The translations under genes and the position numbers were made by a program. The notes beneath the pieces were generated by a model, which searched no databases, was not told the origin of the DNA, and worked only from the letters and a program-made list of their open reading frames with translations. From positions 137,261 through 201,260 of the IMG/VR virus record IMGVR_UViG_3300044645_002359: a stretch of DNA of 64,000 nt. One strand, 5' to 3'. Of the stretch, positions 3 to 41,797 are shown piece after piece (position 1 is the stretch's first letter; every line of letters begins with the position of its first letter).

Positions 3-635
3 CCCTGGGATACAACCCCCGGTTCACAAACTGGCCTTGGTTTTACAACCTGGACCAACTTCAACACCGCTTATGGCACCGCAACCGGCCCCGCCGCATG
101 GTCCGCTCTCTCTGCTAACCCCATTGAGGACATTCTGACCCTGAAGCGTGCTGTTGCCAACCAGATCGGCATCCGTCCGAACTCCGCTGTTCTTGGAACC
201 GCTGTTTTCGACCTCTTGCTGACCAACCAAGCGATCCTTGAGCGTATCAAGTATACCTCACCCGACAGCATCGATACAGATGTCATCGCTCGCTACTTCG
301 GTCTTGAGCGTGGCCTGCGCGTAGCCGAAGGTCGTTATTTGGCCGCAGACGGTACCTTGCAACCGGTATTCCCAAGCAACGGTATCCTTCTGTTCTACAG
401 CCCCAACGGCCCCTCTGATTCAATCATGCCTGCCGGTGGCGCTAATGCTGCGACTCCTGCGTTTAGCTACACATACCAGTTGACTGGCACACCCGCTGTC
501 CGTCCTGAGTACTACATTCGCGAACGCCGCGTTGTACGTGCTGAAATCTCAATCGAACGTGTGGTTAACCTAGTTGGCCTCGGTGCAACTGGTCTTATTG
601 GTTCTGGCGCTATGATCACCGACATCCTGTCCTGA
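3..635 (+). CDS. major capsid protein, C-terminal part (lambda gpE-like), 5'-truncated
   Basis: Frame is open from position 3 (PWDTTPG...NPIEDILTLKRAVANQIGIRPNSAVLG...), upstream of the listed 216 start; resembles the gpE-type capsid C-half; C-ending codon bias typical of a highly expressed gene. Confidence 0.7.
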   Translation, partial: PWDTTPGSQTGLGFTTWTNFNTAYGTATGPAAWSALSANPIEDILTLKRAVANQIGIRPNSAVLGTAVFDLLLTNQAILERIKYTSPDSIDTDVIARYFGLERGLRVAEGRYLAADGTLQPVFPSNGILLFYSPNGPSDSIMPAGGANAATPAFSYTYQLTGTPAVRPEYYIRERRVVRAEISIERVVNLVGLGATGLIGSGAMITDILS

Positions 636-1683: not shown

Positions 1684-4506
1684 ATGCCACGTTATTCACC
1701 ACTACCGTCCGTTTCGATAGACCCCCGAAGTGAAGCAGATTTGGTTCAAGCTGCTGCCCAAACCGTCTACGAAGCCTCTAACAAAACTTTAAATGATTTC
1801 AGTGCAGGCAACCCTCTGGCAGTTCTTTTAGAGGGGCAGGCTTTCGCACAGGGAGAATTTTTGTATTGGGCCAATCAGCTACCAGACAAGATCCTGATTG
1901 AGTGGATAGGACCCTTTTTGGGGGCGATGAGAAGGCTGGGGACCACTTCCACAGCCGAGCTGGTTGTAACAATTCCCCCAACCGGGAGTTCTACAGTAAT
2001 TCCCTCAGGAACGATTTTTTCCACTAACCCTCAACTTACATCTGGAGAAAGTTACGAATTCATATCAAATTTAGACCTGGTTATACCTTCGGGAGAGGCG
2101 ACTGGAAGAGTTCCAGTGTATTCAAGGTTCGTTGGAAGCATATATAATGTTCCTTCAAATTCAATTACAGGGGTTGCTAATACAGGTGCTCTCAATCTTT
2201 CGGCAACCAACCCTCAGCCGTCTGTTGGAGGTAGCGACGTAGAAACTTTCCAAGAAGTACAGGAAAGATTTTTCACCCTTATCCGTAGAAGAAACCCTGT
2301 CAGTGAGTCCGATTGGCAAGACTTTTTCATTGATTTGTACGGGATTGGAACTTTAACTTCGGTTCAACCGAATCGTTCAAATTTTTACGGCTACAACTAC
2401 ACCCAAGATTACACTCTCCCTAATGGACAAGTCTCTTTCTTCGTGTTGGGTCCCAACGGTCAAGAATTAACCACGCAACAATTGTCCTTGGGTCAAAATG
2501 CGGTGAACTTTTCCGTACCCGTTGAAAACCAAGGACATTTATTCCCAATCACCTTGAGTCAAGTACAATACAACTTGACTGTTGAGGTTAACTCAAATGG
2601 ATCGTTCGGCTCAAACTTCAAAGACAGTTCTCTAAATTTTCGCGATAAACTTTTCTCAGTATTGACACCGGGTCAGACTTTTCCAGCCGACATCACACCG
2701 ACAGTAAGTGATATCGACGCCGCTTTTTACTCTACTTTTGATGCGAATACTAGATTTAGAGACCCCTCAATAACAGAGTCTTTAGCGTATAATACTCCAA
2801 ATTCCCTGAGTAAAGAAGCAGCGGTTTATACGAACGTCTATGATTTCACACCCTCAAGTAGTATCTTGAAGCAGAATGACCTTATTGTTGTAAACACCCC
2901 CAACCCAACTTTTTACCCAGTAGAGGCTGATTTCACACCTTATTCTTCCAATAAGTACGATCAGACCGTTTATGGTAATCTTTCCTTAAAGCAGATAAAA
3001 CCCTTGACGTCAGGATCTTACCTCCTTGGCGACATTGTGTATTACGACGGTGCTGGGGACCCGGCTGAACAAGGACTTCATGTTGTCTTAGAAAACCTCA
3101 ACATAGCTTCTTCTTCGGACGTTTTGTCTTCTATAGCAAGCGGAAAAGTGTCTGGGGTTAAAACTTTTTCACCCTGGGTTGTAGGCAACTCTTATGTTTA
3201 CTCCTCGGGAGGAACCATAGACCCTGAGATAGTAGAGTACAATTACTCTTCGGGAGAATTTGTGCCTCTGACTCCTTCTTCTGTTCCCTTAAACAGTCGC
3301 CCAGGAGGGTTCGCCTGGCTGGTTTCACAGAACTTCACTCTCAACCCTTCCACGAATGATATAACTGGGGCCCAGACCGAGGTTTTAATCGGATCCTATA
3401 TTACCCCTCAACAACTAGAGCCTAATTCGTCCTACACCTCTGGCATATGGGTTTGCACTCCCCAAATAGGCGGTGGACCATCACAAGTTGTAGATCCGTA
3501 CTACAACTATGTAGATCTGACCAAAGGGGCCATAGTGAAATATGCTTATGTTGAAGCTAATTTCACCTACACCCCTAACGAATTGACCGTTAGCGAGTAC
3601 TTCAACCTCCTAGTTGATCAAGGAGTGCTGTCGGAAATTCTAGTATTTGAAGGGGATGGCGGTTTGCCTATCTACAAGTACAAAGCTCGGTTTAAAGCGG
3701 GTCAATACTTGCTGTACAAAGAATCCGCGTCCTCTCTACCCACTTACTACATATCTTCCTTATTTTTCACACCAGATAGCACGAACATACAGGACTTACT
3801 AGGGAATGGCTCAGTCTACAATTTGGCGCCGACCCCTGCTCTTCAAGCGCAACTGAACTCTGATTTGGCGGGCTCTTCTCTGAAAAATTTCGATCGGATG
3901 TTCACTTTTTTCCTTGGAGACCGCACTTTTTTCCGGGAAGGCTCAAATGTACAGTCTTACACTGCAACTTCTGCAGTTACACCCTTATTTGACTTTAACA
4001 TTTATTTGAACAATGGAATTTTCGTTGAGTCCGAATCTTTAGGGCAAGCTCTACCTTTAGCTAATGGCTATATCCCGTTTTTTAATCCCGTTTACCTTAA
4101 CACCACTGAAGACACAATTTTAAGCGAGGACGGAAGAAATTACTACAGAGTCATGAAAGCTTTCACACCTTCTACAACGGTGACAAACTGGACTGGAATG
4201 GTGACAAACAACACGTCTAGGTACGAAGAATTCGCGGGCAATTTACTACGTTTTGTAGTCTCCTACCGGTGCGAAGAACCTGTTCTTTCCCAGTACGGAT
4301 TGGAGACTTCTTCAATTAAACTTGGATCTTGTCAGATAACCATCATACCCAGAAACACTGGCAGGAACTTTAGTTCCTCACCGAACTTAGTCTACGTCTG
4401 GGAGAATGCCTCAACCTTGAGCGAAGTACCCGATCTTTCCTGGTATACAGGAACCACTTTTGAATATAGCCCACCCAACTACGGTGAAGGAACGTTGGCC
4501 CTATGA
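1684..4506 (+). CDS. baseplate wedge protein (baseplate J / gp6-like) with long C-terminal extension
   Basis: N-terminal DFSAGNPLAVLLE...IPSGTIFST...ATNPQPSVGGSDVET...RFFTLIRRR is a Baseplate_J pattern; 940 aa. Confidence 0.75.
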   Translation: MPRYSPLPSVSIDPRSEADLVQAAAQTVYEASNKTLNDFSAGNPLAVLLEGQAFAQGEFLYWANQLPDKILIEWIGPFLGAMRRLGTTSTAELVVTIPPTGSSTVIPSGTIFSTNPQLTSGESYEFISNLDLVIPSGEATGRVPVYSRFVGSIYNVPSNSITGVANTGALNLSATNPQPSVGGSDVETFQEVQERFFTLIRRRNPVSESDWQDFFIDLYGIGTLTSVQPNRSNFYGYNYTQDYTLPNGQVSFFVLGPNGQELTTQQLSLGQNAVNFSVPVENQGHLFPITLSQVQYNLTVEVNSNGSFGSNFKDSSLNFRDKLFSVLTPGQTFPADITPTVSDIDAAFYSTFDANTRFRDPSITESLAYNTPNSLSKEAAVYTNVYDFTPSSSILKQNDLIVVNTPNPTFYPVEADFTPYSSNKYDQTVYGNLSLKQIKPLTSGSYLLGDIVYYDGAGDPAEQGLHVVLENLNIASSSDVLSSIASGKVSGVKTFSPWVVGNSYVYSSGGTIDPEIVEYNYSSGEFVPLTPSSVPLNSRPGGFAWLVSQNFTLNPSTNDITGAQTEVLIGSYITPQQLEPNSSYTSGIWVCTPQIGGGPSQVVDPYYNYVDLTKGAIVKYAYVEANFTYTPNELTVSEYFNLLVDQGVLSEILVFEGDGGLPIYKYKARFKAGQYLLYKESASSLPTYYISSLFFTPDSTNIQDLLGNGSVYNLAPTPALQAQLNSDLAGSSLKNFDRMFTFFLGDRTFFREGSNVQSYTATSAVTPLFDFNIYLNNGIFVESESLGQALPLANGYIPFFNPVYLNTTEDTILSEDGRNYYRVMKAFTPSTTVTNWTGMVTNNTSRYEEFAGNLLRFVVSYRCEEPVLSQYGLETSSIKLGSCQITIIPRNTGRNFSSSPNLVYVWENASTLSEVPDLSWYTGTTFEYSPPNYGEGTLAL

Positions 4507-10934: not shown

Positions 10935-12014
10935 ATGGCCATCCCTAAGATAAAAGAAGCCATCTTGTCAACGCCGAAGACAGTAGTTCTGTACTTTGAC
11001 AGCCCCATTGACACCCGAATTAGTGTTCCAGTGAACAGTTTCACTGTGAACTATGGTCAGTTCGGGGTTGTAACCATTGTATACTCTTCGGACACGATGG
11101 TTTCTCTAGGGTTGGATAGTAGCCTCTCTCCTTGGGACGAAGTTTTCGTTTCCTATGAACCGCCGTTGGATCTGAACGCCTGTATGAGGGGACCCATACC
11201 TCCTTCCGCTAACGATGTTGTTAAGAAAAGAAACGCCGTTAGAGCTTTTTATCGAGTAGCAGTTAGAAACTCTTTAGCGCCCGACGAGCGAACGGACGGT
11301 TCCCGTGAAGGGTCGAACCTTGGGCAAACAATCGGGGGTTACGGCTTCCCCTATCAGAATCGGTCTGGGGTTCTAACCGAACATAAATCCGACCCACGGA
11401 GTGCCTCTCCGGACGACTTCATAATTGCTTACGGGCTTAAAGAAGCAATTCAGCTCACAAACATAGACGACGCAAGCGCAAACTCGGTGAATGTCGCTAA
11501 AATGAGGATGGCGCTTGAGGATGCAAATTCTCTAATTGACTCATACATCGAGCAATCAGGTAAAGCGGGAAGGGTTCTAATAACAAGCAACCGCCGCCGA
11601 ACTGCTTTAATTATAGCAAGATATTACCTAGACAATGTTCGAAGAAGAGAAGATGTATACAAAGATTATGTAGAATCTCTAAAACAGCTTGACGCTGAAC
11701 GCGAAATGACTGCTATTCGAGCAGGGCATGGAGATTCGGCGATAGACACGAAGAGAGGAATTATGCGTTCCTGGCGCATCCCTCAAAGATATAATGGTGT
11801 GTCCGGTAAAGGTCTCAGCGGTTGGACAACGGATACAGCTGGGGATCAAGCACCAGACTACCGTTTAGGTTACGGTGCGGTAGGGCAAAACAACGATCAA
11901 GAAAATTGGATTTCCGCCCGAAACTACGAAGACTTGGGAGGTACTCCTCAAATCACAGCACCTAGTGATGCGGGTGGTTACTTCATTAACGGCTCCGACC
12001 AAACTTTCCCTTAA
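10935..12014 (+). CDS. head-tail connector (Mu gp36/DUF1320-like) with N-terminal Ig-like domain
   Basis: QLTNIDD...ALEDANSLIDSYI...IARYYLD...YKDYVESLKQL matches DUF1320; N-terminus VVLYFDSPI...SFTV...EVFVSY resembles SwmB-type repeats. Confidence 0.6.
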   Translation: MAIPKIKEAILSTPKTVVLYFDSPIDTRISVPVNSFTVNYGQFGVVTIVYSSDTMVSLGLDSSLSPWDEVFVSYEPPLDLNACMRGPIPPSANDVVKKRNAVRAFYRVAVRNSLAPDERTDGSREGSNLGQTIGGYGFPYQNRSGVLTEHKSDPRSASPDDFIIAYGLKEAIQLTNIDDASANSVNVAKMRMALEDANSLIDSYIEQSGKAGRVLITSNRRRTALIIARYYLDNVRRREDVYKDYVESLKQLDAEREMTAIRAGHGDSAIDTKRGIMRSWRIPQRYNGVSGKGLSGWTTDTAGDQAPDYRLGYGAVGQNNDQENWISARNYEDLGGTPQITAPSDAGGYFINGSDQTFP

Positions 12015-13245: not shown

Positions 13246-13398
13246 ATGGCGACTCCAGCACAATTATGGGCCCAGTACGACGTTGCTGTTAAGTCCAATA
13301 ACATGCCTCTAGCACAAGCAATCTTGAAACAATTACAAAACTTTAAGAGCTACCCTGCTGTAAAAACAGGGTGCTCACGATGCAGAAAAACACTATGA
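13246..13398 (+). CDS. small hypothetical protein (50 aa, CxxC), absent from the ORF track
   Basis: MATPAQLWAQYDVAVKSNNMPLAQAILKQLQNFKSYPAVKTGCSRCRKTL*; fills the gap exactly; stop overlaps the next ATG (ATGA at 13395-13398). Confidence 0.6.
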   Translation: MATPAQLWAQYDVAVKSNNMPLAQAILKQLQNFKSYPAVKTGCSRCRKTL

Positions 13399-13667
13399 CA
13401 AGCCCCAACGAAAAAATTCTAAAACAGAAAGAATCACTTGCAGCAGCAGCTTTACAGGTTGCAGAAGATGCTCTTGAACTCCTGCAAGGTCAACTGGAGG
13501 AGTGCAGCACTCGCGACCTTGTTACCGTTTTTAACTCGGCTGTGAAAGCCCACCGCGAAATCGTTTCCGACATTGTAAGTCTAACTGATTCTGAAAGCAA
13601 GCAGGAAAAGGTCTTAGCTAAAGAGTACAATACGACACTAGAAAAGTTATTGAAAAATCTAGAGTGA
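13395..13667 (+). CDS. terS: putative terminase small subunit
   Basis: Helical 90 aa protein immediately upstream of terL; start placed at the coupled ATG 13395. Confidence 0.45.
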   Translation: MTSPNEKILKQKESLAAAALQVAEDALELLQGQLEECSTRDLVTVFNSAVKAHREIVSDIVSLTDSESKQEKVLAKEYNTTLEKLLKNLE

Positions 13668-13687: not shown

Positions 13688-15451
13688 ATGACCTTTCAAC
13701 ACCCCTCTATAACACATGCTTCTCAACTTGACGAAAAGTCACGGTGGAGAAAGTATAAAAGAGGGATTCGAGAACTTGAGCTTCTTGAGGCCCCTAAATC
13801 CGTAATTCAAGAATTTAAGTACAAAGCAGCGAGAGATTGTTTCCTAGCCTTCTGCGACATCATGAAAAACGGGGACTTAAAAGTTGCCCCATTTCATGAA
13901 ATCATAGCCAGCGCTTTTGAAGATCTTTTTGAACGAAGGTACAGACGTCTCATTATATCGTGCCCTCCGCGTTCGGGGAAATCTATGCTTTCTACGATGT
14001 TTTTAGCGTGGCTGTTGGGTAAGGACGAAAGGACTCAGCATATCTTGGCTTCTTACGGTGCCACGCTGTCTCAAAAATTCCACAGAGAAGCTGTGGTAAT
14101 GATGAAAACCCCTTCCTATAAAAAGATCTTTCCTGAATTTTCTGGATTCAACCGGGATTCTAAATATGACTTAATAGGAGGTGGCTACATACTTGCGACT
14201 TCTGTGGGGGGTATTCTCACAGGTTTCACTTCTGGGACAATTGATATGGACTCAGTAGGTATTGGAGCGGCTTTGATCGACGATCCACTAAAGTCTTCGG
14301 ATTCGAAAGCAGCCCTAGACAACTTAGAAAGTTGGTGGGCAGAGCAAATGTCTACTAGAAGAACAAACCACTACGCTCAAGTTATCATTGCAACTCGCTT
14401 CCATGAGAAAGACCTTCACGGGGTGTTACTTGATGGGGATGGACTCTATGACCCTGGGGAGAACCCGTTCGGATGGAGATGGATCAACATCGCAGGACTT
14501 TGTGAGGACCCTGAAAACGACCCTCTAGGTAGACAACTTGGAGAGAGCCATTGGCCGGAAAATTCTGCCTTCTCTGTGCCTATGCTTGAGTCCCAGAAAA
14601 AGATCATGGGCAGCTTTAAGTTTGCCGCTCTATACCAAGGAGTCCCTGTAGCTTCCGAAGGGCAGATCGTAAAAAGCAGCTGGGTTGAGATCATTGAAGA
14701 GGAAGAATGCCCCGACCTGGATGTTGTATGGTTCGGAGTTGACTGTGCCTTTTCAGAAAGGGAGATGGCTGACGAAAGTGCGATCTGCGTGGCTGGGATA
14801 AGTACTCGGACACCGGACATTGTTTACATTCGAGACATTGTGAAAGGTAAATGGGGCTTTCCGGACTTAATTGAGTCAGTGAAGCAACAGTACGCCTATT
14901 ACAAAGCGAAAGTTCTTTGCATTGAAAAAGCAGCGTCGGGGCACTCTCTCATTCAAATGCTAAAGAGGGAAGCCAGGATCCCAATCGAAGAAATGCGTCC
15001 CTTAAAGTCGAAAACCACTCGCCTTCAGGCAGTCTGCCCTTTACTTGAGAACAGCCGCGTTAAACTAGTAAGGGGTCTATGGACCGATGCGTTCGTAAAA
15101 GAGTTGACCTCTTTCCCCTACGTAAGGCACGAAGACAGTCTCGACGCGATGGTCTGGGCGCTGACCTACTACTCTCTCAAACTTGATACCATCGACAGAG
15201 GGATTCAAGAGTCAATCGTTCAAAACCGAAAGTGGAGTGGCGATCTTCGCAGAGCCGCTTTTAGTGACGGCGCTTCTTACGGAAACCTGTTTGAGGATAA
15301 GGGCAGTGCCCTTGGCGGGCGTAGAATGCCTGGCGACGGTAGTTTAAACGACCCTGACTTTCAGTCTGCTAACACTCCGGATCAAGGTCTCTTCAGGGGC
15401 GGCAGGAGCAGAAACCTTCGCAGTGGGTCTGGATACAACCTTTGGAATTGA
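13688..15451 (+). CDS. terL: terminase large subunit
   Basis: Walker A CPPRSGKS, Walker B LIDDP, IATRFHEKDL, nuclease FGVDCAF and HEDSLDA. Confidence 0.92.
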   Translation: MTFQHPSITHASQLDEKSRWRKYKRGIRELELLEAPKSVIQEFKYKAARDCFLAFCDIMKNGDLKVAPFHEIIASAFEDLFERRYRRLIISCPPRSGKSMLSTMFLAWLLGKDERTQHILASYGATLSQKFHREAVVMMKTPSYKKIFPEFSGFNRDSKYDLIGGGYILATSVGGILTGFTSGTIDMDSVGIGAALIDDPLKSSDSKAALDNLESWWAEQMSTRRTNHYAQVIIATRFHEKDLHGVLLDGDGLYDPGENPFGWRWINIAGLCEDPENDPLGRQLGESHWPENSAFSVPMLESQKKIMGSFKFAALYQGVPVASEGQIVKSSWVEIIEEEECPDLDVVWFGVDCAFSEREMADESAICVAGISTRTPDIVYIRDIVKGKWGFPDLIESVKQQYAYYKAKVLCIEKAASGHSLIQMLKREARIPIEEMRPLKSKTTRLQAVCPLLENSRVKLVRGLWTDAFVKELTSFPYVRHEDSLDAMVWALTYYSLKLDTIDRGIQESIVQNRKWSGDLRRAAFSDGASYGNLFEDKGSALGGRRMPGDGSLNDPDFQSANTPDQGLFRGGRSRNLRSGSGYNLWN

Positions 15452-15469
15452 CAAATTTACTTTACTAAA

Positions 15470-16867
15470 ATGACACCGAAACATCCAAAAATAACACACG
15501 TTTCCCAGCTATCGGAGCACTCAAGCTGGAGAAAGTACAAGAGAGAACTTCTTGAACTTGAAATGAATGGCGGCCACTGGGCAAAAACGACTGACTTAAC
15601 TAAAGAGTCTGTCAAAAATAGTTTCGCTGCCTATTTATCTCTCTCCACATCCGCACCCCTTCTAAACTGGGAAACTTATGAAGTCTTGGGGTCCGCCTTT
15701 GAAGACATTGCTGAAGGCAGGTACCCAATCCTCTTAGTATCAATGCCCCCCCGCACAGGAAAGTCAACATTGGGCTCTCTCTTTCTGTCATGGCTCCTGG
15801 GTAAAGACCCTGATACTAACCATTTCGTAACTTCTTACAATGAGGGTATCACCGACTTAGCAGTAAGTAGAGTTAAGCAGTTGGTTAGTGCCTTTCCTTT
15901 TGAGGAATTGTTTTCAAAACTTGATTTGCGGGCTGATAGCGTAACATCGGCTAACATCCCCTGGCGTAGGCACGGGTATCGTTCACCTTGGGGTGGACCC
16001 AACGGGGTACCAGGGGTTTGGTTAATCGATGACTATCACAAGTCCTCAAATATAACAGTAAATAAAGACTGGATAGAAGAGGAAATTATGACCCGGCGCC
16101 ACCAAAACAGTGCCATTGTTGTTCTCGGGTCAAGATGGGGTGATGAAGACATTTTTGGCTACTTTTTAGAGAAATTCGGTGTCTTTGACCCCGTATCAAA
16201 CCCGAAAGGAGCCGCCCACATTAATTTGTCAGCAATTATTGAAAGTAAAGAAGAGGCAGAAAATGATATTCTGGGTAGGAATGTAGGGGAAACCCCGAGT
16301 ATAATCAATTCCTTCTGGTCCCCCGAAAATCTGAACCATATTAGAAGGAATATCGGCGATGAAAAGTTCTCCTGGCTCTATAAGGGATGCTCACCGACAC
16401 CAGAAATCCCCCCATTAGATAGAGTTATCATTTCTGTTGATCCTGCTTTCAGTGCCGACAGCATTGATAAAACAGGTATTTGCATCGCAGGGGTTACAAA
16501 GAAAAGGGACTACATGTATGTTCTTGATACTTACGAAGGCAATTGGGACTTGAAAACTGTCGGAGTAATCCTAAGCCTAGCAGTTAAGGCATACGGAGCG
16601 GAAGAAATTGTACTTGAATCCGCCAGGGTAAGTGCAGCTTGGACTGTGTACCTACAGGACTTAGGGTTAAACGTTTGCGTAGGTAGCAAGTTGAAACAAA
16701 CCAAATTAAATGCCTTCACTCAAATGTTAAGCTCAGGGAAAGTAAAATTCTCTAATTCGGATACTCTCAGTGCGTTGGATGCCTGTGATAACTTCCAGAT
16801 TTCATTATCCGACACCATGTATGCAGTCTTAGTTAGCTACAGCCAACTACTGCCTGTCGTTACTTGA
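15470..16867 (+). CDS. terL: diverged terminase large subunit paralogue
   Basis: N-terminus HPKITHVSQLSEHSSWRKYKRE aligns with terL1; MPPRTGKS, LIDDY, ISVDPAF present; C-terminal HxD..DA motif eroded. Confidence 0.8.
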   Translation: MTPKHPKITHVSQLSEHSSWRKYKRELLELEMNGGHWAKTTDLTKESVKNSFAAYLSLSTSAPLLNWETYEVLGSAFEDIAEGRYPILLVSMPPRTGKSTLGSLFLSWLLGKDPDTNHFVTSYNEGITDLAVSRVKQLVSAFPFEELFSKLDLRADSVTSANIPWRRHGYRSPWGGPNGVPGVWLIDDYHKSSNITVNKDWIEEEIMTRRHQNSAIVVLGSRWGDEDIFGYFLEKFGVFDPVSNPKGAAHINLSAIIESKEEAENDILGRNVGETPSIINSFWSPENLNHIRRNIGDEKFSWLYKGCSPTPEIPPLDRVIISVDPAFSADSIDKTGICIAGVTKKRDYMYVLDTYEGNWDLKTVGVILSLAVKAYGAEEIVLESARVSAAWTVYLQDLGLNVCVGSKLKQTKLNAFTQMLSSGKVKFSNSDTLSALDACDNFQISLSDTMYAVLVSYSQLLPVVT

Positions 16868-16925
16868 CGGCAAATTGCGATTCGCAACCGCATAAAAAGT
16901 TGCTGTTGTTACCAACAGTTTCAAA

Positions 16926-17129
16926 ATGGCTATTTCACCAACAGATAAAAACCCTGCTATCATGCAGGAGCTACACGGCACTCGTTGCCTTATCACAGAC
17001 CCTGCCTCAGATAAGTACCTCAGTCAAGCCAAGAAAAGACCCCAATATGTCATTCCCGAAGACTCCTACTCCCGATGGTGTGGAGGAGCTAACGGGTTCG
17101 ACTTGTTTGTCGAAAGGGTTCATGAATGA
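16926..17129 (+). CDS. hypothetical protein (67 aa)
   Basis: AAAATG start; preferred over the overlapping 16864 frame. Confidence 0.5.
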   Translation: MAISPTDKNPAIMQELHGTRCLITDPASDKYLSQAKKRPQYVIPEDSYSRWCGGANGFDLFVERVHE

Positions 17130-17181
17130 GTACATAGAGAGTTTGCTTAACCGTGAGGAGTGGTGGTCTCTTTAGAACCTT

Positions 17182-17204
17182 GACCCTCTAACGAGGGTCT
17201 TTTT
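17182..17204 (+). terminator. rho-independent terminator
   Basis: GACCCTC-taac-GAGGGTC-TTTTT. Confidence 0.85.
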
Positions 17205-17242: not shown

Positions 17243-18067
17243 ATGACTCTGCCTATTCGTTTCGAAGGGGGTGAGGATCATGTAGTCCTAATTATCAACG
17301 AAGCATACACGTTATCCACTGTTGTCACTAACCCTCTTTATCAAATGTTGAAAAGTAAAGAAAAGCGCAAAACACGCCGCGCTGAATCCGCTCAAATGGT
17401 TGAACGCTCCTACAACCGAGGCATGGATGTTGCCTCTCCGAAATTCCTCACCTGGCGGCAGGAAGAGTTTTGGAATCTACTTAAGAGAAATACCGTTACT
17501 ATTGCCGCAGGTTCGGCCGGAACAGGTAAGACTCTTATTGCTCTGCATTTCGGACTCGTTGGAGTAGCAAACGGGGACTTTGACAAAGTCTACTATGTTC
17601 GCAGCGATGTTGGAGTTGAACTGCAAAGGGGGAGAGGAGCCCTACCGGGCGAGATGTCAGACAAGATTGCCCCACTCGTAGCTCCAATATACGACAACCT
17701 TCCCTGCATCATGCGGTCTCAAGGGGCTGCCGAATACCTGCTATCCAAGAAAATTATTGAGCCGATTCTACTCGAGGACATTCGGGGCCGCTCACTAAAT
17801 AATGCTTTCATCATTGTAGATGAGGCCCAGAACTTCCTATCAGGACACTGCAAAACGGCGCTCTCTCGCGTTGGCAAAGACTCAAAAATTTGCCTCATAG
17901 GAGATACAAAACAAACAGACTTGGAAGCTTTCCGCAGAGACAACGGCTTGCTTGACGCCATTCATAGATTGAAAAATCTTGAGCAGGTTGGAATCGTGCA
18001 GTTTCAGAGAGAGGACATCGTTCGCAACTCTGTAATTGCTCACATTCTAGACAGATACGAGGATTGA
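17243..18067 (+). CDS. phoH: PhoH family ATPase
   Basis: GSAGTGKT Walker A, RG..PG...DK..P, RGRSLNNAFIIVDEAQN, GDTKQTDL, IVRNSVI. Confidence 0.92.
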   Translation: MTLPIRFEGGEDHVVLIINEAYTLSTVVTNPLYQMLKSKEKRKTRRAESAQMVERSYNRGMDVASPKFLTWRQEEFWNLLKRNTVTIAAGSAGTGKTLIALHFGLVGVANGDFDKVYYVRSDVGVELQRGRGALPGEMSDKIAPLVAPIYDNLPCIMRSQGAAEYLLSKKIIEPILLEDIRGRSLNNAFIIVDEAQNFLSGHCKTALSRVGKDSKICLIGDTKQTDLEAFRRDNGLLDAIHRLKNLEQVGIVQFQREDIVRNSVIAHILDRYED

Positions 18068-28342: not shown

Positions 28343-31300
28343 ATGTCAGCAAAACGAATAATCCTGAAGCGTTCTTCAATCGCAGGAAAGCGTCCAACTT
28401 CAGAAAACCTCTCTCCCGGCGAACTCGGACTAAATACGAATAGCGTAGAACCGGGCATTTTCTTCGAAGCAACCGACGGTCAGATAGTCAAAGCGGGTCC
28501 TCCTGCTGTACTGCCTTACTCTCCAACCAACTTTCCTGAAAAGGGGGAATTGTGGTACGACCTGGAAGACGGAACCCTAAATGTAGGCGACGCTGAGAAA
28601 CACTGGCGCACCGTAGCCGCTCCTTTCTTAGGGGGCGGAGGAAGCGTAGTATTTGTCGCGCCCGAGTTTGAGTACTCAACGGACTCTCTAAGGAATGACG
28701 GGCAAGCTCTGCCCTTCCAAACTCTAACCCGTGCAATACTTGAATTATCCAAAATATATATAAGCCGCGTTTTAACTGGCTTTTCAACTTCGGATGAGAG
28801 CAACCGCTACACAATTTTCCTATCGTCCTCAGTAATTACAGCGAACAACGGCCCAGGAGTCAGCCTTAACGACTTCACCGTAAATTTTTCCTCTTCAACA
28901 GAAACAGCGGTCACAATTCCACAACTCCAGCAGTTTAACCCTGTTGAAGGGGGTATTATGGTACCTTTCGGTATTTCCATCCGGGGCTTGGATCTGAAAA
29001 AGTGTATAATTTCTCCCTCTTACGTTCCAACTTACTTAAACCCTTCCTTCCCTCCAGCTTCTCAGGGTGTAGACCAACCCCTGAGTTCAATCCTTAAGTG
29101 TGGAGGAAATGTTCTAGCCAACGACTTTTCTGTTATTGATAAGTTGAGATCGAGAGTAGTAATTTCAGTATCGGATAAAAATGGCCTAGCCGTCTTTGAC
29201 TCAGAAAGACCCCATTGCCTCGGCTTCAACGATCTTGTATCCGTTAATTTTGAGCCCACCGTAGATCAGAGCACTGGAACTTTCACTGCTGGAAATTACT
29301 ACGCGATACCACTAAACACTTATAGTTTCTACCTTTCCTACGGCTCTCAAACTGAAAATCCTGCAGCGGAATACGTTCCATTCGCAGCTTTGCCACTTTC
29401 AGGTTCTGGTAAAACTCCTAAACTTTTAGTGACAAACACACTCAAGTCGTCTCACAGGTTGAAAGTTTTTGAAAATGCTACTCTGGCAGACATTGGCGAT
29501 TACTTCACAAAAGTACAAAGAGCTTTTCCAGACTTCTTTGGTGGCAGAGTTACAGAGGGTTCTAGTATAGTAAACAGCGGAGACTACGTAATTGTGGGTC
29601 CGGTTGATACTTATCCAAATAACGAAGGGTCCAACACAACTAAAAACTCGTCTTTCTACGCAAATCAAGTTAACTTGAGATCTGAATACGGAATGAATTG
29701 GGGAGACTTTGATGGCTCCATAGTTTCCGGATTCAAGTCAGTGATCGCGAATGCTTGCACAGCGATTTCTCTTCAAAATGATCCTTGTGTGTACGAAATT
29801 TACACAACGTTGGTGAACCCTGCTACCGGACTCCCTGAGCAAAAGTGGTGGAATTTAACCGAAGCAAAGTTCTTGTCCACTCCTGTCGAACTTCGCCCCT
29901 CTTCAATAGCCGATGTTCCTGTTCCTGAACAGCTCTCTCTACTCAACTCAACACCCATAAACAACATACGCTACTATTACAAGAACCTGACTGAACCTGG
30001 AGGGGCAAGCATAGGAATTGTTGACATTGAAAGAGATTTCCGGCACTTCGGGTTCAGAGTAAGGAACGGTGCCTACGGCCAATTCCAATCGGTTTACAGC
30101 ATTGGACCCGCAATCGGTGTTTGGGCCTTGAATGGTGGTATTTGTAGCTTAACAAATAGTACGACAAACTTCGGATCAGTTGCCTTTAAGACCGAAGGTT
30201 TCCTTGGAATTAACACCATTGGAGGGGCAAAGCCCAACGGAAAGGGTTTCGTTTTAGAGGGTGTTCAAAGACCTTTGGCGCTTCTGAAGTCACAAGTAGA
30301 GAGCCAAGATAATAAGAAAATTCTTTCTCTCGGTGGCAAAATCTCCTCTATCTACATCGACCCTGAGGACCCGAACATACAAATTTTAGGGTTAAACTCG
30401 GACTTCTTACCTTGCTATTTGTTGCCTTATTCATTGGCACCTGGCACTGCACTATGGGTAGAAACTGAGTCTTGTACCTACAGGGGTTTTCTAGCCACAG
30501 ATGGCGGTCCCACAATTATAACAGGTTTGGGAGACCCCATCAATTTCGCTAAGATTAGACTCAGATCTTCAGACAGCACTATTCCGAATGACGAAGGTCT
30601 TCTTCCAGTCTTGGGGGTTCCTTACATTAGAAGATTTATAGACCCGCGACTTGACTTTGAGAGGTCTTACAGTCTTTTTATTCGTAACACCCTTCCAAAC
30701 GCAATCGCGCCCCAAGTCGGTTCAGTTCTGCGCCTAAACCAAACTAGCCAGCAACTGGGGTCTGTTTCATTGAGGCCCAACGTACAATTTGACCCTGGAA
30801 TCTTGGGGGGATGGGGAAGAATTTTTACAGTCGACGCAACCGAGACCGGTGGGCAAGGCTCTTCCCCCCAATTCAACTACGTTATAGGAGACAGCAACCA
30901 AGACCTTACCTATTACGTTGCTATTACGACCACGGATTACAGTCGTCCCTGGGGGCAAGGTCCGAACTTTGATCTTCCCGCCGGTTCTTACACAACGTAC
31001 AGGAATAGAAATTGGTACTCAGCCGAAAACAACCTATGGGGTTGTGTTTATTACGGAGATGCTTCTAGTTTCACTGATAGCTTCGGACCTTTCTCAGTCG
31101 CTCCTGTCGAATCTTGCTCACCCTTCGTAGATACGAGTGTTTTAGAGAGGCAAGACAGAGTCTCAGAGACTTTTCAAGGTTCTTATGCTGCGGATTCCTA
31201 CCTAGCCTTGGAAGGTTATCTGGAACAAACATATTTTAGGGGGGCAACAGAGCCTTACCCAACTTACTCCTCTCAGAATGTATACGATGGAGACGATAGC

Positions 31301-33112
31301 ACCGAAGGGTTAGGATTATGTTTGAAAGACTTGGCGGACGGCGAAGTAACTTACACCGTTTCAGAATTGGTAGAGATACAGTCAGAGCAACAGGCGACTT
31401 TGACTCCAGTTCCGCAAAGATACCGTCCCGCAATAGTAGAGTTCTCCGTTCTATCCTCGGTAAACATTGAAAACCCTCGTCAAACAGCTTCCGTCCTGAG
31501 ACTCAGCTCTGTGTCAGGAGTTGAATACATTCGAGTGATAAATCTGAATGGAACCGTTGTTCGAGGTATTCGTTTAACCTATGAAAATGGCTACTACCCC
31601 ACAACTTTACCAGGGAACGATTGGCCTCAACAAACCACAGTAACAGTTTGCAGTACAAATCCAATCCCTCAGACCGAACTTTACGATCCTGACTGGATAA
31701 ACACGAAGAGGGCCGTATACCGATTCTTCGAAGTTATGGGATACTCTCAAAGCGTCATGAAGCCTTATCTTACCCCGAAGTACTGGGGTGAACGTTTACT
31801 ATCGGTACTCTCTTTAACCGGAAATCTTCCGATTAACGGGTATGCATTGACGACAGATAAGTGGCCCCTTGAGTTTAACCAGCCCTCGATTGTAATTGCA
31901 AACACTCACACTTGGGCTTACGCAGGGTACTACAATTATTCTCGTGGTCTCCCTGAGTTCCAGAGTAACGATTTCACGAGAAAGTTAGCCACGGACTACC
32001 AAGCTACAACTACATGGAGCGGAAGACTTACGGTAACAGGGGTGAACGACAAGGGAGAAATTGTACAGTTTGGTCCTCAGCGTCAGGCTCTCACTGCGAA
32101 CTATTACGAATCTACTGCTCCAATTGTAAACCCGAGCAATCAGCAAATCTATGAAGAACAACCTTATGTTGAATTCCCCTCACAAGTTGTTGTTTACTCT
32201 GCCGACGACTTCTCGTCAAGTTTCGATGGCTCTCAATCAACTTTCGATTTAACTCGCAGTGGTTTAGCAATTCCTCCGGATCAGCTGCTTGCAGAGTCAA
32301 TGTTAGTGACACTCGGTGCTTCCGTTCAAAAACCTTACCAAGACTACATACTTATTGGGAACAGAATTCAATTCACAACTCCCCCCGTAGCCGGTTTGTC
32401 GAGCAACGTTCGAATCATAACTAGCGTTGACTCAAGCCGAACTCTAACGGTCGCTACATTAGCTTTCGTTGAAACCTTCGATGGGGCAAGAACTACTTTC
32501 ACTGCTAATATTCCGTCTGATCCGGCTTCTCTGATCCCTTTGGAGATCACTGCTAACAACACTTTCGTTTTCTTGGGTGGCGTTGAGCAAATTCCTCTCT
32601 CAAATGTGAACCCTTCTCTACCGTTCTCGTACTCGGTAGAAAGAACTTCTCCAACGACAGTTCAATTCTCTTTCACAGGTGTACCTCCTACGGGCACTAC
32701 TCTCGACGTGAGAGCTATTTGTTCTGGCTCCTACTGGTCTCTACGTTCAACTTTCCCTGTGGAAGTTTATTCCCTCGATGACATCAGCAGTGAATTTAAT
32801 GGGGCTCAGACCTCTTTCACTCTGAAGTATGGGGGGAAAGTTGTAAACGCAGCGACTGTAACTGCTGATAACCTTCTGCTAAGCTTAGGGGGCGCCGTTC
32901 AGATTCCGGGAGTTTCTTACACAGTTGAAAACTCAGTTCTAACCTTCTTGGATTCCACGGATGCCCCTCAGCCCGATACTCTTGTGAACTTGAGGGTAAT
33001 TACAAACGCCGAATTCATTTTCTGCCCAAACCAGGGTAAGTATGGAAGCAGCTTTTTGCGTTGGGGTCCTGGCATAGTCCTGACGTTGGCTAACGAAGCA
33101 GGCCTGCTGTGA
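28343..33112 (+). CDS. long tail fibre/virion structural protein (1589 aa)
   Basis: RIILKRSSIAGKRPT...GELGLN anchor domain; beta-helix-like core paralogous to the next gene; C-terminal DD.SS.F[DN]G...F Ig-like repeats. Confidence 0.7.
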   Translation: MSAKRIILKRSSIAGKRPTSENLSPGELGLNTNSVEPGIFFEATDGQIVKAGPPAVLPYSPTNFPEKGELWYDLEDGTLNVGDAEKHWRTVAAPFLGGGGSVVFVAPEFEYSTDSLRNDGQALPFQTLTRAILELSKIYISRVLTGFSTSDESNRYTIFLSSSVITANNGPGVSLNDFTVNFSSSTETAVTIPQLQQFNPVEGGIMVPFGISIRGLDLKKCIISPSYVPTYLNPSFPPASQGVDQPLSSILKCGGNVLANDFSVIDKLRSRVVISVSDKNGLAVFDSERPHCLGFNDLVSVNFEPTVDQSTGTFTAGNYYAIPLNTYSFYLSYGSQTENPAAEYVPFAALPLSGSGKTPKLLVTNTLKSSHRLKVFENATLADIGDYFTKVQRAFPDFFGGRVTEGSSIVNSGDYVIVGPVDTYPNNEGSNTTKNSSFYANQVNLRSEYGMNWGDFDGSIVSGFKSVIANACTAISLQNDPCVYEIYTTLVNPATGLPEQKWWNLTEAKFLSTPVELRPSSIADVPVPEQLSLLNSTPINNIRYYYKNLTEPGGASIGIVDIERDFRHFGFRVRNGAYGQFQSVYSIGPAIGVWALNGGICSLTNSTTNFGSVAFKTEGFLGINTIGGAKPNGKGFVLEGVQRPLALLKSQVESQDNKKILSLGGKISSIYIDPEDPNIQILGLNSDFLPCYLLPYSLAPGTALWVETESCTYRGFLATDGGPTIITGLGDPINFAKIRLRSSDSTIPNDEGLLPVLGVPYIRRFIDPRLDFERSYSLFIRNTLPNAIAPQVGSVLRLNQTSQQLGSVSLRPNVQFDPGILGGWGRIFTVDATETGGQGSSPQFNYVIGDSNQDLTYYVAITTTDYSRPWGQGPNFDLPAGSYTTYRNRNWYSAENNLWGCVYYGDASSFTDSFGPFSVAPVESCSPFVDTSVLERQDRVSETFQGSYAADSYLALEGYLEQTYFRGATEPYPTYSSQNVYDGDDSTEGLGLCLKDLADGEVTYTVSELVEIQSEQQATLTPVPQRYRPAIVEFSVLSSVNIENPRQTASVLRLSSVSGVEYIRVINLNGTVVRGIRLTYENGYYPTTLPGNDWPQQTTVTVCSTNPIPQTELYDPDWINTKRAVYRFFEVMGYSQSVMKPYLTPKYWGERLLSVLSLTGNLPINGYALTTDKWPLEFNQPSIVIANTHTWAYAGYYNYSRGLPEFQSNDFTRKLATDYQATTTWSGRLTVTGVNDKGEIVQFGPQRQALTANYYESTAPIVNPSNQQIYEEQPYVEFPSQVVVYSADDFSSSFDGSQSTFDLTRSGLAIPPDQLLAESMLVTLGASVQKPYQDYILIGNRIQFTTPPVAGLSSNVRIITSVDSSRTLTVATLAFVETFDGARTTFTANIPSDPASLIPLEITANNTFVFLGGVEQIPLSNVNPSLPFSYSVERTSPTTVQFSFTGVPPTGTTLDVRAICSGSYWSLRSTFPVEVYSLDDISSEFNGAQTSFTLKYGGKVVNAATVTADNLLLSLGGAVQIPGVSYTVENSVLTFLDSTDAPQPDTLVNLRVITNAEFIFCPNQGKYGSSFLRWGPGIVLTLANEAGLL

Positions 33113-33116
33113 TTAA

Positions 33117-33127
33117 AGGGTAAAGTT
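33117..33127 (+). promoter_or_regulatory. putative late promoter box
   Basis: AGGGTAAAGTT; GGG 36 nt before GTG 33154. Confidence 0.6.
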
Positions 33128-33153
33128 CACTATATACGTTAGTTCTGAAAACA

Positions 33154-36804: not shown

Positions 36805-36808
36805 ACAA

Positions 36809-37156: not shown

Positions 37157-37208
37157 GCCCCTCTTTCTAATTATACTTAAGGCGTTATCGAAGGCCATTA
37201 AACTGGGG

Positions 37209-37219
37209 CGGGTATAACT
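37209..37219 (+). promoter_or_regulatory. putative late promoter box (GGGTATA variant)
   Basis: CGGGTATAACT; GGG 44 nt before ATG 37254. Confidence 0.5.
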
Positions 37220-37253
37220 CACTATAAGGACTGAAAACGAACTCTAAGTCACC

Positions 37254-41795: not shown

Positions 41796-41797
41796 TC

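What the first reader, a model, noticed from the sequence alone, without database searches (positions are those of the whole stretch)
13688..16867. Tandem terminase large subunit paralogues, the second with an eroded nuclease end
Two full-size terL-like genes lie 18 bp apart and share a distinctive N-terminus (HP.ITH.SQL.E.S.WRKYKR). Copy 2 keeps Walker A (MPPRTGKS), Walker B (LIDD) and the first nuclease Asp (ISVDPAF). It is shorter just before Walker B, and the HEDSLDA motif of copy 1 is replaced by ISLSDTM. The frame is intact despite strong divergence, which suggests selection: a hetero-oligomeric motor subunit, a cleavage-dead regulator, or a decoy against host sensors that recognise terminase (Avs-type systems are known to do so). 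No intein or intron split explains the pair.
Basis: partly seen in the sequence, partly recalled or inferred. Interest (0 to 1): 0.7.

Follow-up and report, generated by a model that had tools for sequence, protein, structure and literature searches.

The report
Tail-less second terminase gene beside the first
A large freshwater phage carries, right after its normal DNA-packaging enzyme gene, an old, fast-evolving second copy that keeps the ATP-burning core, lacks the tail thought to dock on the capsid, and is swapped between related phages; what it does is unknown.

Summary
TerL1 (13688-15451, 587 aa) and TerL2 (15470-16867, 465 aa) lie 18 bp apart on the + strand and are 31% identical (E 5e-61). 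TerL1 is a canonical large terminase, nearest in sequence to the T7/PhiV-1 type. TerL2 belongs to a small family of about 35 protein clusters, found here only directly downstream of a TerL1 gene.

TerL2 is not decaying. Its frame is intact in 15 of 16 distinct loci. Its dN/dS is about 0.3, against about 0.04 for TerL1.

It is an accessory gene. It is present in 26 of 75 informative TerL1-family loci, and absent from the cultured relative S-CBWM1 and from 264-268 kb relatives. It has been exchanged as a roughly 2 kb cassette between lineages whose TerL1 proteins are only 62% identical.

Selection is tightest on the ATPase core and lid. The "eroded nuclease" claim is only partly right. The correct alignment is HEDSLDA = LSDTMYA. 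The T4-type triad (D324, E383, D448) is therefore kept, and only the flanking His and second Asp are lost. More divergent family members do lose catalytic acids.

TerL2 also lacks TerL1's 85-residue disordered C-terminal tail.

My best reading, at low-to-moderate confidence, is a co-expressed auxiliary ATPase subunit that does not dock on the portal. A role in phage-host or phage-phage conflict is not excluded. Novelty: a new variant of a known kind.

The parts
13380..13667 (+). 95-aa helical protein directly upstream of TerL1; possible small terminase subunit (inferred from position and size only)
   Evidence: Conserved upstream of TerL1 in all relatives, including S-CBWM1 gp102 (33% identity). 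No Pfam, PHROG or PADLOC match.
13688..15451 (+). TerL1: canonical large terminase, nearest in sequence to the T7/PhiV-1 type, 587 aa
   Evidence: PHROG 38, 1.7e-80; Terminase_6C, 6.5e-16. A family profile hits PDB 8dgc_E (PhiV-1 TerL) and 4bij (T7 gp19). dN/dS is 0.02-0.06. All catalytic residues are invariant.
13961..13984 (+). TerL1 Walker A, CPPRSGKS (residues 92-99)
   Evidence: R95, G97, K98 and S99 are invariant or nearly so in the family.
14270..14284 (+). TerL1 Walker B, ALIDD (residues 195-199)
   Evidence: D198 and D199 are invariant.
15128..15148 (+). TerL1 nuclease motif H481-E-D483-S-L-D486-A487, at the start of the last helix
   Evidence: D483 and D486 are invariant and H481 nearly so. 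The helix spans 483-499 in the model. T4 gp17 has H540-D-D542 at this place.
15194..15448 (+). TerL1 disordered C-terminal tail (residues 503-587); most relatives have a GY motif near the end. TerL2 has no counterpart.
   Evidence: pLDDT is about 31 over 503-587. C-terminal endings are listed. Its role in portal docking is inferred from T3/T7 gp19 (own knowledge).
15452..15469 (.). 18-bp spacer between TerL1 and TerL2, with no terminator-like site
   Evidence: In relatives the spacer is 18-85 bp.
15470..16867 (+). TerL2: diverged, tail-less paralogue of TerL1, 465 aa
   Evidence: 31% identical to TerL1. PHROG 38, 7.4e-26. AlphaFold model pLDDT 84; best PDB matches are TerLs: 8dgc_E, HK97, T4 gp17. 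The family has about 35 clusters, and every contig examined has it after TerL1.
15482..15559 (+). TerL2 N-terminal motif shared with TerL1 (residues 5-30, HPKITHVSQLSEHSSWRKYKRELLEL)
   Evidence: Nearly invariant in both families. Absent from the PhiV-1 TerL alignment, which starts at profile position 44.
15743..15766 (+). TerL2 Walker A, MPPRTGKS (residues 92-99)
   Evidence: G97 is kept in 38 of 38 family rows and K98 in 37 of 38. The window 69-93 has pN/pS 0.10.
15884..16018 (+). Hypervariable, shortened segment before Walker B (residues 139-183). It lacks TerL1's invariant GG.LTG motif.
   Evidence: pLDDT is below 50 at 164-169. pN/pS is 0.4-0.7. Sequences are compared.
16019..16033 (+). 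TerL2 Walker B, WLIDD (residues 184-188)
   Evidence: D187 is kept in 38 of 38 rows; position 188 is D in 37 and E in 1.
16112..16273 (+). Most constrained block of TerL2 (residues 215-268): motif III (LGSR) and the following lid/linker region
   Evidence: pN/pS is 0.09-0.15. Long runs of invariant columns.
16439..16441 (+). TerL2 D324, first nuclease Asp (= TerL1 D352, T4 D401)
   Evidence: Kept in 36 of the 37 family rows that reach it (S in P0162).
16616..16618 (+). TerL2 E383, second nuclease acid (= TerL1 E413, G20c D347, T4 E458)
   Evidence: K in P0022 and P0032, E in the others.
16805..16825 (+). TerL2 L446-S-D448-T-M-Y451-A452, counterpart of TerL1 H-E-D-S-L-D-A. The central Asp is kept; the His and second Asp are lost.
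16847..16855 (+). Invariant C-terminal LLP motif, specific to TerL2
   Evidence: L460, L461 and P462 are invariant in the main family.
16926..17129 (+). Conserved 67-aa gene (MAISPTDKNPAIMQE...), the real downstream neighbour. It was part of the exchanged cassette.
   Evidence: Homologues follow TerL1 or TerL2 in L065, L083, L117 and L118. The overlapping 103-aa ORF at 16864..17175 is probably spurious.
17182..17199 (+). First intrinsic-terminator-like hairpin with a T run downstream of the TerL1-TerL2-orf67 block
   Evidence: consensus scan only.
17243..18067 (+). PhoH-like ATPase, the conserved downstream anchor of the variable slot
   Evidence: PF02562, 3.5e-51. It follows TerL1 directly in loci that lack TerL2.

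Best explanation
Shown.
- The window is part of a 201 kb viral contig from a lake-water metagenome. Its nearest cultured relative is Synechococcus phage S-CBWM1.
- TerL1 is the phage's ordinary large terminase, nearest in sequence to the T7/PhiV-1 type.
- TerL2 is an old paralogue from the same terminase lineage. It survives as an accessory gene in some lineages only, always directly after TerL1.
- TerL2 is under purifying selection, strongest on the ATPase core and the lid/linker block.
- TerL2 moves between related phages as a cassette of about 2 kb by homologous recombination.
- TerL2 lacks TerL1's 85-residue disordered C-terminal tail and its invariant GG.LTG and interdomain motifs.
- TerL2 keeps a T4-type nuclease triad but has lost the flanking His and second Asp.

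Inferred mechanism.
- TerL2 is co-transcribed with TerL1 late in infection.
- It binds and hydrolyses ATP and oligomerises through the conserved ATPase/lid surfaces, with itself or with TerL1.
- It uses the shared N-terminal motif to reach the same partner as TerL1, possibly the small upstream protein.
- Without the tail it cannot dock on the portal by itself. It would therefore act off the capsid, at the DNA-recognition or maturation step.
- In short, it would be an auxiliary or regulatory terminase subunit with weakened or dispensable cleavage, not a second packaging motor.
For: - Paralogy and fold.
- Always adjacent to TerL1, with no terminator in the 18-bp gap.
- Selection: TerL2 dN/dS is 0.13-0.56 against 0.02-0.06 for TerL1. 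The tightest windows are 69-93 and 215-264, at 0.09-0.15.
- ATPase residues are kept in 37 of 38 family rows. Nuclease acids are lost in P0162, P0032 and P0022.
- The N-terminal motif is nearly invariant in both families.
- TerL1's tail is disordered and has no counterpart in TerL2.
- P0014 fuses an extra TerL2 ATPase domain in frame to a full TerL2. This fits ATPase domains that sit side by side.
- The TerL2 clade and the TerL1 clade group together against the outgroups, with 100/99 support.
Against: - No experiment or interaction evidence exists. The one complex prediction (TerL2 with the 95-aa upstream protein) gave no answer.
- TerL2 is missing from most relatives, so packaging does not need it.
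- TerL1 shows no loss of function that TerL2 could complement.
- TerL2 alleles 85% identical sit beside TerL1 proteins only 62% identical. That argues against a tightly co-evolved heteromer.
- Fast evolution, mosaicism and patchy distribution look more like a conflict gene than a motor part.
- The portal-docking role of the tail rests on T3/T7 knowledge, not on a test here.
Confidence: 0.4

Rival explanations
1. Conflict gene. TerL2 is a terminase-derived accessory protein used against host defences or against co-infecting relatives or satellites. It might soak up factors that target terminase, or interfere with a rival's packaging complex through the shared N-terminal motif.
For: - Patchy presence among close relatives.
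- Cassette-like exchange with sharp boundaries.
- Internal mosaicism and synonymous divergence above that of TerL1 in the same genome pairs.
- dN/dS five to ten times that of TerL1.
- It sits in a slot that holds other cargo in relatives, such as a fatty-acid desaturase-like gene and unknown ORFs.
- Terminase is a known target of the Avs1-3 and Upx sensors.
Against: - No 25-codon window reaches pN/pS above 1.
- There are no PADLOC or anti-defence family matches.
- A binding decoy would be expected to trigger Avs, because target binding is what activates it.
- The most conserved parts are the catalytic ATPase core and lid. A passive decoy would not obviously need these.
Confidence: 0.27
2. Free-standing ATP-dependent nuclease. 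TerL2 works away from the capsid on another DNA substrate: host DNA breakdown, debranching of the concatemer, or the initial cut.
For: - The T4-type triad D324/E383/D448 is complete in the window's copy.
- All four acids, including D451, are present in the L023/L024/L033/L036 subgroup.
- There is no tail for portal docking.
- The ATPase is intact.
Against: - The C-terminal half of the nuclease domain is among the least constrained parts.
- Catalytic acids are lost in three lineages.
- The His and second Asp are lost here. The equivalents SPP1 D403N and H400A impair cleavage (PMC2685612).
Confidence: 0.15
3. Selfish cassette. TerL2 is a terminase-derived homing-type nuclease that promotes its own spread into the TerL1-orf67 junction of TerL2-less relatives during co-infection.
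For: - Sharp recombination tract starting exactly at the TerL2 start codon.
- Presence/absence polymorphism at one fixed site.
- Retention of a nuclease triad.
Against: - Selection is strongest on the ATPase, not on the nuclease.
- Nuclease acids are lost in some lineages that still keep the gene.
- The family is old and deeply diverged at one locus.
- Nothing indicates a target site.
Confidence: 0.06
4. Decaying or merely redundant duplicate with no function of its own.
For: - Constraint is relaxed compared with TerL1.
- Several motifs that are invariant in TerL1 are lost.
- One relative (L027) has a +1 frameshift in a poly-C run.
- Tandem duplication is common in this genome.
Against: - Frames are intact in 15 of 16 distinct loci, and in family members down to 38% identity.
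- dN/dS is well below 1 in almost all informative pairs.
- Blocks with pN/pS of about 0.1 exist.
- The origin predates the split from S-CBWM1 (AU p 0.0008).
- TerL2 is 31% identical to TerL1, so it is not a redundant copy.
Confidence: 0.05

Closest known systems
T7-like large terminase (T7 gp19; PhiV-1 TerL, PDB 8DGC chain E, 4BIJ)
   Same: It is the closest solved relative of the TerL1/TerL2 lineage by profile search and by fold. It shares the Walker A with a preceding Arg, the hhhDD Walker B and the H-D-D-x-x-D-A nuclease motif. Its length of 586 aa matches TerL1.
   Different: TerL2 is 122 aa shorter than TerL1. It has no C-terminal tail, lacks the GxLTG segment before Walker B, and has L-S-D-x-x-Y-A in place of H-D-D-x-x-D-A. 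Both TerL1 and TerL2 carry an extra N-terminal motif of about 30 residues that the PhiV-1 alignment does not cover.
Synechococcus phage S-CBWM1 gp103 (Aokuangvirus), the nearest cultured relative
   Same: Its TerL is 57% identical to TerL1. The gene order is the same: 407-aa gene, small upstream gene, TerL, small gene, PhoH.
   Different: S-CBWM1 has a single TerL and no TerL2 (one search finds one place in the record).
T4 gp17 and its internally initiated shorter products (gp17', gp17'')
   Same: This is a phage making more than one terminase-large-subunit polypeptide. The T4 triad D401/E458/D542 maps onto TerL2 D324/E383/D448.
   Different: The T4 variants are N-terminal truncations of one gene. 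TerL2 is a separate, 31%-identical gene that keeps the N-terminus and lacks the C-terminus.
Catalytically uneven paralogous subunits in ring ATPases (for example F1 alpha/beta, RFC); own knowledge
   Same: A duplicated P-loop ATPase subunit with diverged active-site surroundings that could sit in a mixed ring.
   Different: Those paralogues are obligate and co-evolve. TerL2 is optional and is exchanged between lineages.
'Two terminase large subunit' annotations in the literature (Staphylococcus prophage vB_G30_01, Xanthomonas Xap phages)
   Same: Two TerL-annotated ORFs are reported in one phage or one phage group.
   Different: One case is two adjacent TerL-annotated ORFs with no analysis of their relation. 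The other is alternative TerL alleles in different isolates. Neither describes a conserved, diverged, full-length tandem paralogue.

Membership tests
Large terminase subunit (TerL; PHROG 38, T7/PhiV-1-like lineage) | Significant sequence match to TerL family profiles | tested here: met
   PHROG 38, 7.4e-26, over residues 42-443. hhalign against the TerL1 family gives probability 100 and E 1.7e-65. Pfam Terminase_6C reaches only 19.8 bits, below the 22.6 cut-off.
Large terminase subunit (TerL; PHROG 38, T7/PhiV-1-like lineage) | Two-domain fold: N-terminal ASCE ATPase plus C-terminal RNase H/RuvC-like nuclease | tested here: met
   AlphaFold model pLDDT 84. The top Foldseek PDB hits are all TerLs: 8dgc_E 5e-15, HK97 6z6d, T4 3cpe, D6E, Sf6.
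Large terminase subunit (TerL; PHROG 38, T7/PhiV-1-like lineage) | Walker A Lys, Walker B acids and motif III | tested here: met
   K98, D187-D188 and S221-R222 are present here. They are kept in 37 of 38 family rows.
Large terminase subunit (TerL; PHROG 38, T7/PhiV-1-like lineage) | Full set of nuclease metal-site residues of its own lineage (D, E, H-x-D-x-x-D) | tested here: not met
   D324, E383 and D448 are kept. H481 and D486, nearly invariant and invariant in the TerL1 family, are L446 and Y451 in TerL2. The T4-type triad alone is complete. Activity was not tested.
Large terminase subunit (TerL; PHROG 38, T7/PhiV-1-like lineage) | C-terminal element for docking on the portal or prohead | tested here: not met
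   TerL1 has an 85-residue disordered tail, and most relatives have a GY motif near the C-terminus. TerL2 ends 5 residues after its last helix, at LLPVVT. That the tail is the docking element is inferred from T3/T7, not tested.
Large terminase subunit (TerL; PHROG 38, T7/PhiV-1-like lineage) | Universally present, single-copy, essential gene of the phage group | tested here: not met
   TerL2 is absent from 49 of 75 informative TerL1-family loci, from S-CBWM1 and from 264-268 kb relatives. TerL1 meets this feature.
Large terminase subunit (TerL; PHROG 38, T7/PhiV-1-like lineage) | ATP-driven DNA translocation and concatemer cleavage | not testable with these tools
   Needs biochemistry.
Pseudogene or decaying duplicate | Disrupted frame or dN/dS near 1 | tested here: not met
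   The frame is intact here and in 15 of 16 distinct loci. The exception, L027, has +1 C in a poly-C run. dN/dS is typically about 0.3.
Anti-defence decoy or inhibitor of terminase sensors (Avs1-3, Upx) | Binds the sensor, or protects the phage from it, without activating it | not testable with these tools
   No PADLOC match. The literature search found no terminase-like decoy. The evolutionary pattern is compatible with this reading but not specific to it.
Homing endonuclease-like selfish cassette | The nuclease is the selected activity; defined target at the empty site; biased transmission | tested here: inconclusive
   Presence/absence at a fixed site and a sharp recombination tract fit. 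However, the nuclease half is the less constrained one and is lost in some lineages. Target cleavage is not testable here.

The most novel reading that the evidence does not exclude
TerL2 is a terminase-derived conflict protein of a kind not yet described. It would be an ATPase-active, non-docking mimic of the packaging enzyme. Phages of this group would exchange it and use it either to neutralise host or satellite factors that target terminase, or to sabotage the packaging complexes of co-infecting relatives through the shared N-terminal motif.
Probability: 0.2. Interest if true: 0.85.

Novelty: new variant of a known kind. Interest (0 to 1): 0.55.

Why it matters
The large terminase is treated as a single-copy hallmark gene of tailed phages. 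It is the standard marker for phage phylogeny and a main target of bacterial sensors such as Avs and Upx.

A second full-length copy that is old, selected, tail-less, optional and horizontally exchanged does not fit that picture. It offers a natural experiment on three questions:
- which parts of a terminase are needed off the capsid;
- whether packaging motors or maturation complexes can take in a specialised paralogue;
- whether terminase mimicry is used in phage-host or phage-phage conflict.

There is also a practical point. TerL2 can confound TerL-based trees and marker counts in freshwater viromes, because its history is uncoupled from that of TerL1.

Tried and rejected
1. Genome-size link. 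TerL2+ contigs include 272-282 kb ones, while S-CBWM1 is 139 kb. I therefore asked whether a second TerL goes with jumbo genomes. It does not: the 264 kb (P0118) and 268 kb (P0049) relatives have TerL1 followed directly by PhoH.

2. Subfunctionalisation. TerL1 keeps every invariant residue whether or not TerL2 is present.

3. A compensated frameshift as the cause of the odd WRRHGYRSPWGG segment before Walker B. No alternative frame reproduces the relatives' sequence.

4. MAFFT's alignment of the last motif (D448 = D486, with HEDS deleted). I rejected it in favour of D448 = D483, on the evidence of profile-profile alignment, the helix starts, fewer indels and the subgroup motifs.

5. Complex prediction of TerL2 with the 95-aa upstream protein. 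The tool gave no answer (score 0.00). This counts neither for nor against binding.

6. Direct sequence search of TerL1 against PDB found nothing. Only the family profile reached 8dgc_E and 4bij. A nuclease-only profile reached G20c/P74-26 but stopped before the last motif.

7. Near-identity DNA search of the phage collection found no match.

8. Literature searches for duplicated TerL or terminase decoys found no comparable case.

9. RNA evidence. One metatranscriptome holds two short contigs from a relative: 162 nt in the TerL1 tail, and 388 nt over the TerL2 3' end plus orf67. This is too little to show transcription, and DNA carry-over is not excluded.

10. The 103-aa ORF overlapping the TerL2 stop (16864..17175) was first taken as the neighbouring gene. 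The conserved gene is the 67-aa ORF in another frame.


Full report
**1. What is there**

The window is bases 137261-201260 of a 201,260-bp viral contig. The contig is found in lake-water and freshwater metagenomes.

ORF listing gives two + strand genes: 13688..15451 (587 aa, TerL1) and 15470..16867 (465 aa, TerL2). They are 18 bp apart. BLASTP between them gives 31% identity over 463 columns, E 5e-61.

Both match PHROG 38 'terminase large subunit' (1.7e-80 and 7.4e-26). TerL1 passes Pfam Terminase_6C. TerL2 falls just under its cut-off.

The genome search finds exactly these two TerL places. An independent lake sample holds an identical contig across the junction.

**2. Which terminase lineage**

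A profile of TerL1 relatives reaches the PhiV-1 (T7-like) large terminase, PDB 8dgc chain E, and T7 gp19.

An AlphaFold model of TerL2 (pLDDT 84) has TerLs as its best PDB matches: 8dgc_E, HK97, T4 gp17, D6E and Sf6.

The nearest named phage is Synechococcus phage S-CBWM1. Its single TerL (gp103) is 57% identical to TerL1 and 28.5% identical to TerL2. It lies in the same gene order: 407-aa gene, small gene, TerL, small gene, PhoH.

**3. TerL2 is a family, always next to TerL1**

The 5.8-billion-protein search finds about 34 clusters of TerL2 relatives at 38-100% identity.

An exhaustive profile search of 1.84 billion representatives finds only four 50%-identity clusters of TerL2 type (P0014, P0019, P0032, P0162). 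After those, the scores drop to TerL1-type proteins.

In every contig examined, TerL2 sits directly after a TerL1 gene. It is followed by a conserved gene of 67-84 aa and then PhoH. This holds for the 18 loci, the further loci, and the most divergent members L117, L118 and L119.

**4. It is optional**

Eighty TerL1-family loci were fetched with a family alignment. Of these:
- 26 carry TerL2;
- 49 have TerL1 followed by PhoH with no TerL2;
- 5 are too short to tell.

The TerL2-bearing loci fall in two TerL1 subclades that are not sisters.

S-CBWM1 lacks TerL2. So do two relatives on contigs of 264 and 268 kb. That removes the idea that a second TerL goes with jumbo genome size.

The slot between TerL1 and PhoH holds other cargo in some relatives: a fatty-acid desaturase-like gene in L065, and an unknown 255-aa ORF in L083.

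**5. Selection**

Nei-Gojobori estimates were made on 16 distinct TerL1/TerL2 pairs.
- TerL1 dN/dS is 0.02-0.06 where synonymous sites are unsaturated.
- TerL2 dN/dS is 0.13-0.56, typically about 0.3.

All TerL2 frames are intact except L027, which has one extra C in a poly-C run.

Along TerL2 the constraint is uneven.

| Residues of TerL2 | pN/pS | Region |
|---|---|---|
| 69-93 | 0.10 | up to Walker A |
| 215-264 | 0.09-0.15 | motif III and lid/linker |
| 1-25 | 0.24 | N-terminal motif |
| 286-380 | ~0.25 | nuclease core |
| 119-214 | 0.42-0.69 | around and before Walker B |
| 381-452 | 0.47-0.64 | C-terminal half of the nuclease domain |

No window exceeds 1. In TerL1 the nuclease domain is the most constrained part.

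**6. History**

A maximum-likelihood tree gives these results:
- a TerL2 clade with 100/100 support;
- a TerL1 clade that includes S-CBWM1, also 100/100;
- the two together against more distant TerLs, 100/99;
- a TerL2 stem twice as long as the TerL1 stem.

An AU test rejects a tree in which TerL2 arose after the S-CBWM1 TerL split off (p 0.0008). Long-branch effects cannot be excluded. TerL2 is therefore an old paralogue that was lost many times, transferred, or both.

Transfer is directly visible. Between the window and L004, TerL1 is 62% identical and its synonymous sites are saturated. TerL2 is 85% identical with dS 0.24. Nucleotide identity jumps from about 0.6 to 0.8-0.99 exactly at the TerL2 start and falls back inside the 5' end of PhoH.

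Within TerL2 the identity to other relatives is mosaic.

**7. Active sites**

*ATPase.* K98, D187-D188 and S/T221-R222 are kept in 37 of 38 family rows. P0007 has K98R. These correspond to T4 K166 and D255-E256.

*Nuclease, TerL1 family.* D352, E413, D483 and D486 are invariant, and H481 nearly so. E413 aligns with G20c D347.

*Published mutational data:*
- G20c D294, D347 and D429 are indispensable, and H427 contributes (PMC5389553).
- In SPP1, D266, D321 and D403 are essential. H400 occupies the place of T4 D542 (PMC2685612).

T4 gp17 reads H540-D541-D542-L-V-M545. TerL1's H481-E-D483-S-L-D486 therefore combines the T4/G20c pattern (H-x-D) and the SPP1 pattern ([H/D]-x-x-D).

*Nuclease, TerL2.* MAFFT placed D448 under D486. 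Four lines favour D448 = D483 instead:
- profile-profile alignment of the C-terminal segments;
- the last helix starts at D483 in the TerL1 model and at D448 in the TerL2 model;
- this alignment needs 2 rather than 5 indel positions;
- subgroup motifs match it: SDIMDA reproduces D-x-x-D-A, and P0025 has H-P-D.

So HEDSLDA corresponds to LSDTMYA. The window's TerL2 keeps the T4-type triad D324/E383/D448. It has lost the His (to L) and the second Asp (to Y).

One subgroup (L023, L024, L033, L036) keeps all four acids. Three divergent lineages lose catalytic acids: P0162 has D324S, P0032 has E383K and D448G, and P0022 has E383K.

The nuclease is thus weakened or dispensable at family level. It cannot be called dead in this copy.

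**8. Other differences from TerL1**

- TerL2 lacks TerL1 residues 503-587. That tail is disordered (pLDDT about 31), and most relatives have a GY motif near the C-terminus.
- TerL2 ends with its own invariant LLP motif.
- It lacks the invariant GG.LTG segment before Walker B and the G-Q-I-x-K-x-x-W interdomain motif.
- Both proteins share an N-terminal motif of about 30 residues that is nearly invariant in each family. The PhiV-1 alignment does not cover it.
- TerL1 keeps all its invariant residues whether or not TerL2 is present.
- P0014 (locus L117) is a TerL2 ATPase-only copy fused in frame to a complete TerL2, again after TerL1.

**9. Expression context**

No terminator-like site lies between TerL1 and TerL2. 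The first one follows the 67-aa gene, at 17182-17199 (consensus scan only).

A metatranscriptome holds two short contigs of a relative. One spans the TerL2 3' end and the 67-aa gene. This is too little to claim transcription.

**10. Interpretation**

*Shown:* an ancient, selected, optional, horizontally exchanged, tail-less paralogue with a conserved ATPase core.

*Inferred:*
- co-expression with TerL1;
- ATP hydrolysis;
- oligomerisation through the conserved ATPase/lid block;
- use of the shared N-terminal motif for a partner it has in common with TerL1;
- no independent docking on the portal.

I rank an auxiliary or regulatory terminase subunit acting at the maturation step first (0.4). The points against it are listed under the best explanation.

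A conflict role ranks second (0.27). The decoy form is awkward, because binding of terminase is what activates Avs.

The other rivals rank as follows:
- a free-standing ATP-dependent nuclease, 0.15;
- a selfish homing-type cassette, 0.06;
- a decaying duplicate, 0.05.

The single complex prediction allowed (TerL2 with the 95-aa upstream protein) returned no answer.

**11. Novelty**

Literature searches found no description of a conserved, diverged, full-length tandem TerL paralogue. The hits were two adjacent TerL-annotated ORFs in one prophage and alternative TerL alleles in different isolates.

I class TerL2 as a new variant of a known kind, with interest 0.55.

Noticed in passing
window 16926-17129 (+), against the overlapping ORF 16864-17175: The conserved gene after TerL2 is a 67-aa ORF (MAISPTDKNPAIMQE...RWCGG..GFD.F.ER). 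It is found after TerL1 or TerL2 in distant relatives. The longer 103-aa ORF that overlaps the TerL2 stop is probably spurious. No family match.
   Followed up: partly
window 13380-13667 (+): A 95-aa helical protein lies directly upstream of TerL1 and is conserved down to S-CBWM1 gp102. It is a candidate small terminase by position and size only. No family match, and the complex prediction with TerL2 gave no answer.
   Followed up: partly
L117:1110-3362 (protein P0014): In one relative, a TerL2 ATPase-only copy is fused in frame to a full-length TerL2, giving a 750-aa product after TerL1. This is a further round of duplication within the TerL2 family. It rests on a single 3.5-kb Logan contig, so misassembly is not excluded.
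   Followed up: partly
L027:7760-7790 (277 kb contig IMGVR_UViG_3300044625_001067): TerL2 is frameshifted by one extra C in a CCCCC run. This could be a sequencing error or a real disruption. It is the only broken copy seen.
   Followed up: partly
L065:5991-7140 (- strand); L083:4000-4767; L123:6407-8188: The TerL1-PhoH neighbourhood is a variable slot. L065 has a fatty-acid desaturase-like gene (PF00487, 5e-9) plus a 154-aa ORF on the opposite strand. L083 has an unknown 255-aa ORF. L123 has a 593-aa ORF with a faint HNH_4 hit after PhoH.
   Followed up: partly
window 28343-41795 (+): Three very large tandem genes (1589, 1216 and 1513 aa) are paralogues of one another (26-34% identity in parts). 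The whole genome has about ten tandem paralogue families, so local duplication is a habit of this phage.
   Followed up: no
window 40001-44000: G+C rises to 0.51-0.53, against about 0.45-0.47 elsewhere, with negative GC skew at 42-44 kb. This may be foreign or compositionally distinct DNA.
   Followed up: no
window 15884-16018 (TerL2 residues 139-183): The window's TerL2 subgroup (WIN, L017, L004) has a basic WRRHGYRSPWGG segment where other TerL2 proteins have GGSVCGFAYG. It is not a frameshift product. Its meaning is unknown.
   Followed up: partly
window 10935-12014 (+): A 359-aa protein has a Mu Gp36-like head-tail adaptor domain (PF07030, 1.8e-8). With a baseplate wedge-like protein at 1684-4506, this shows that the terminase genes sit at the end of a structural module.
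   Followed up: no
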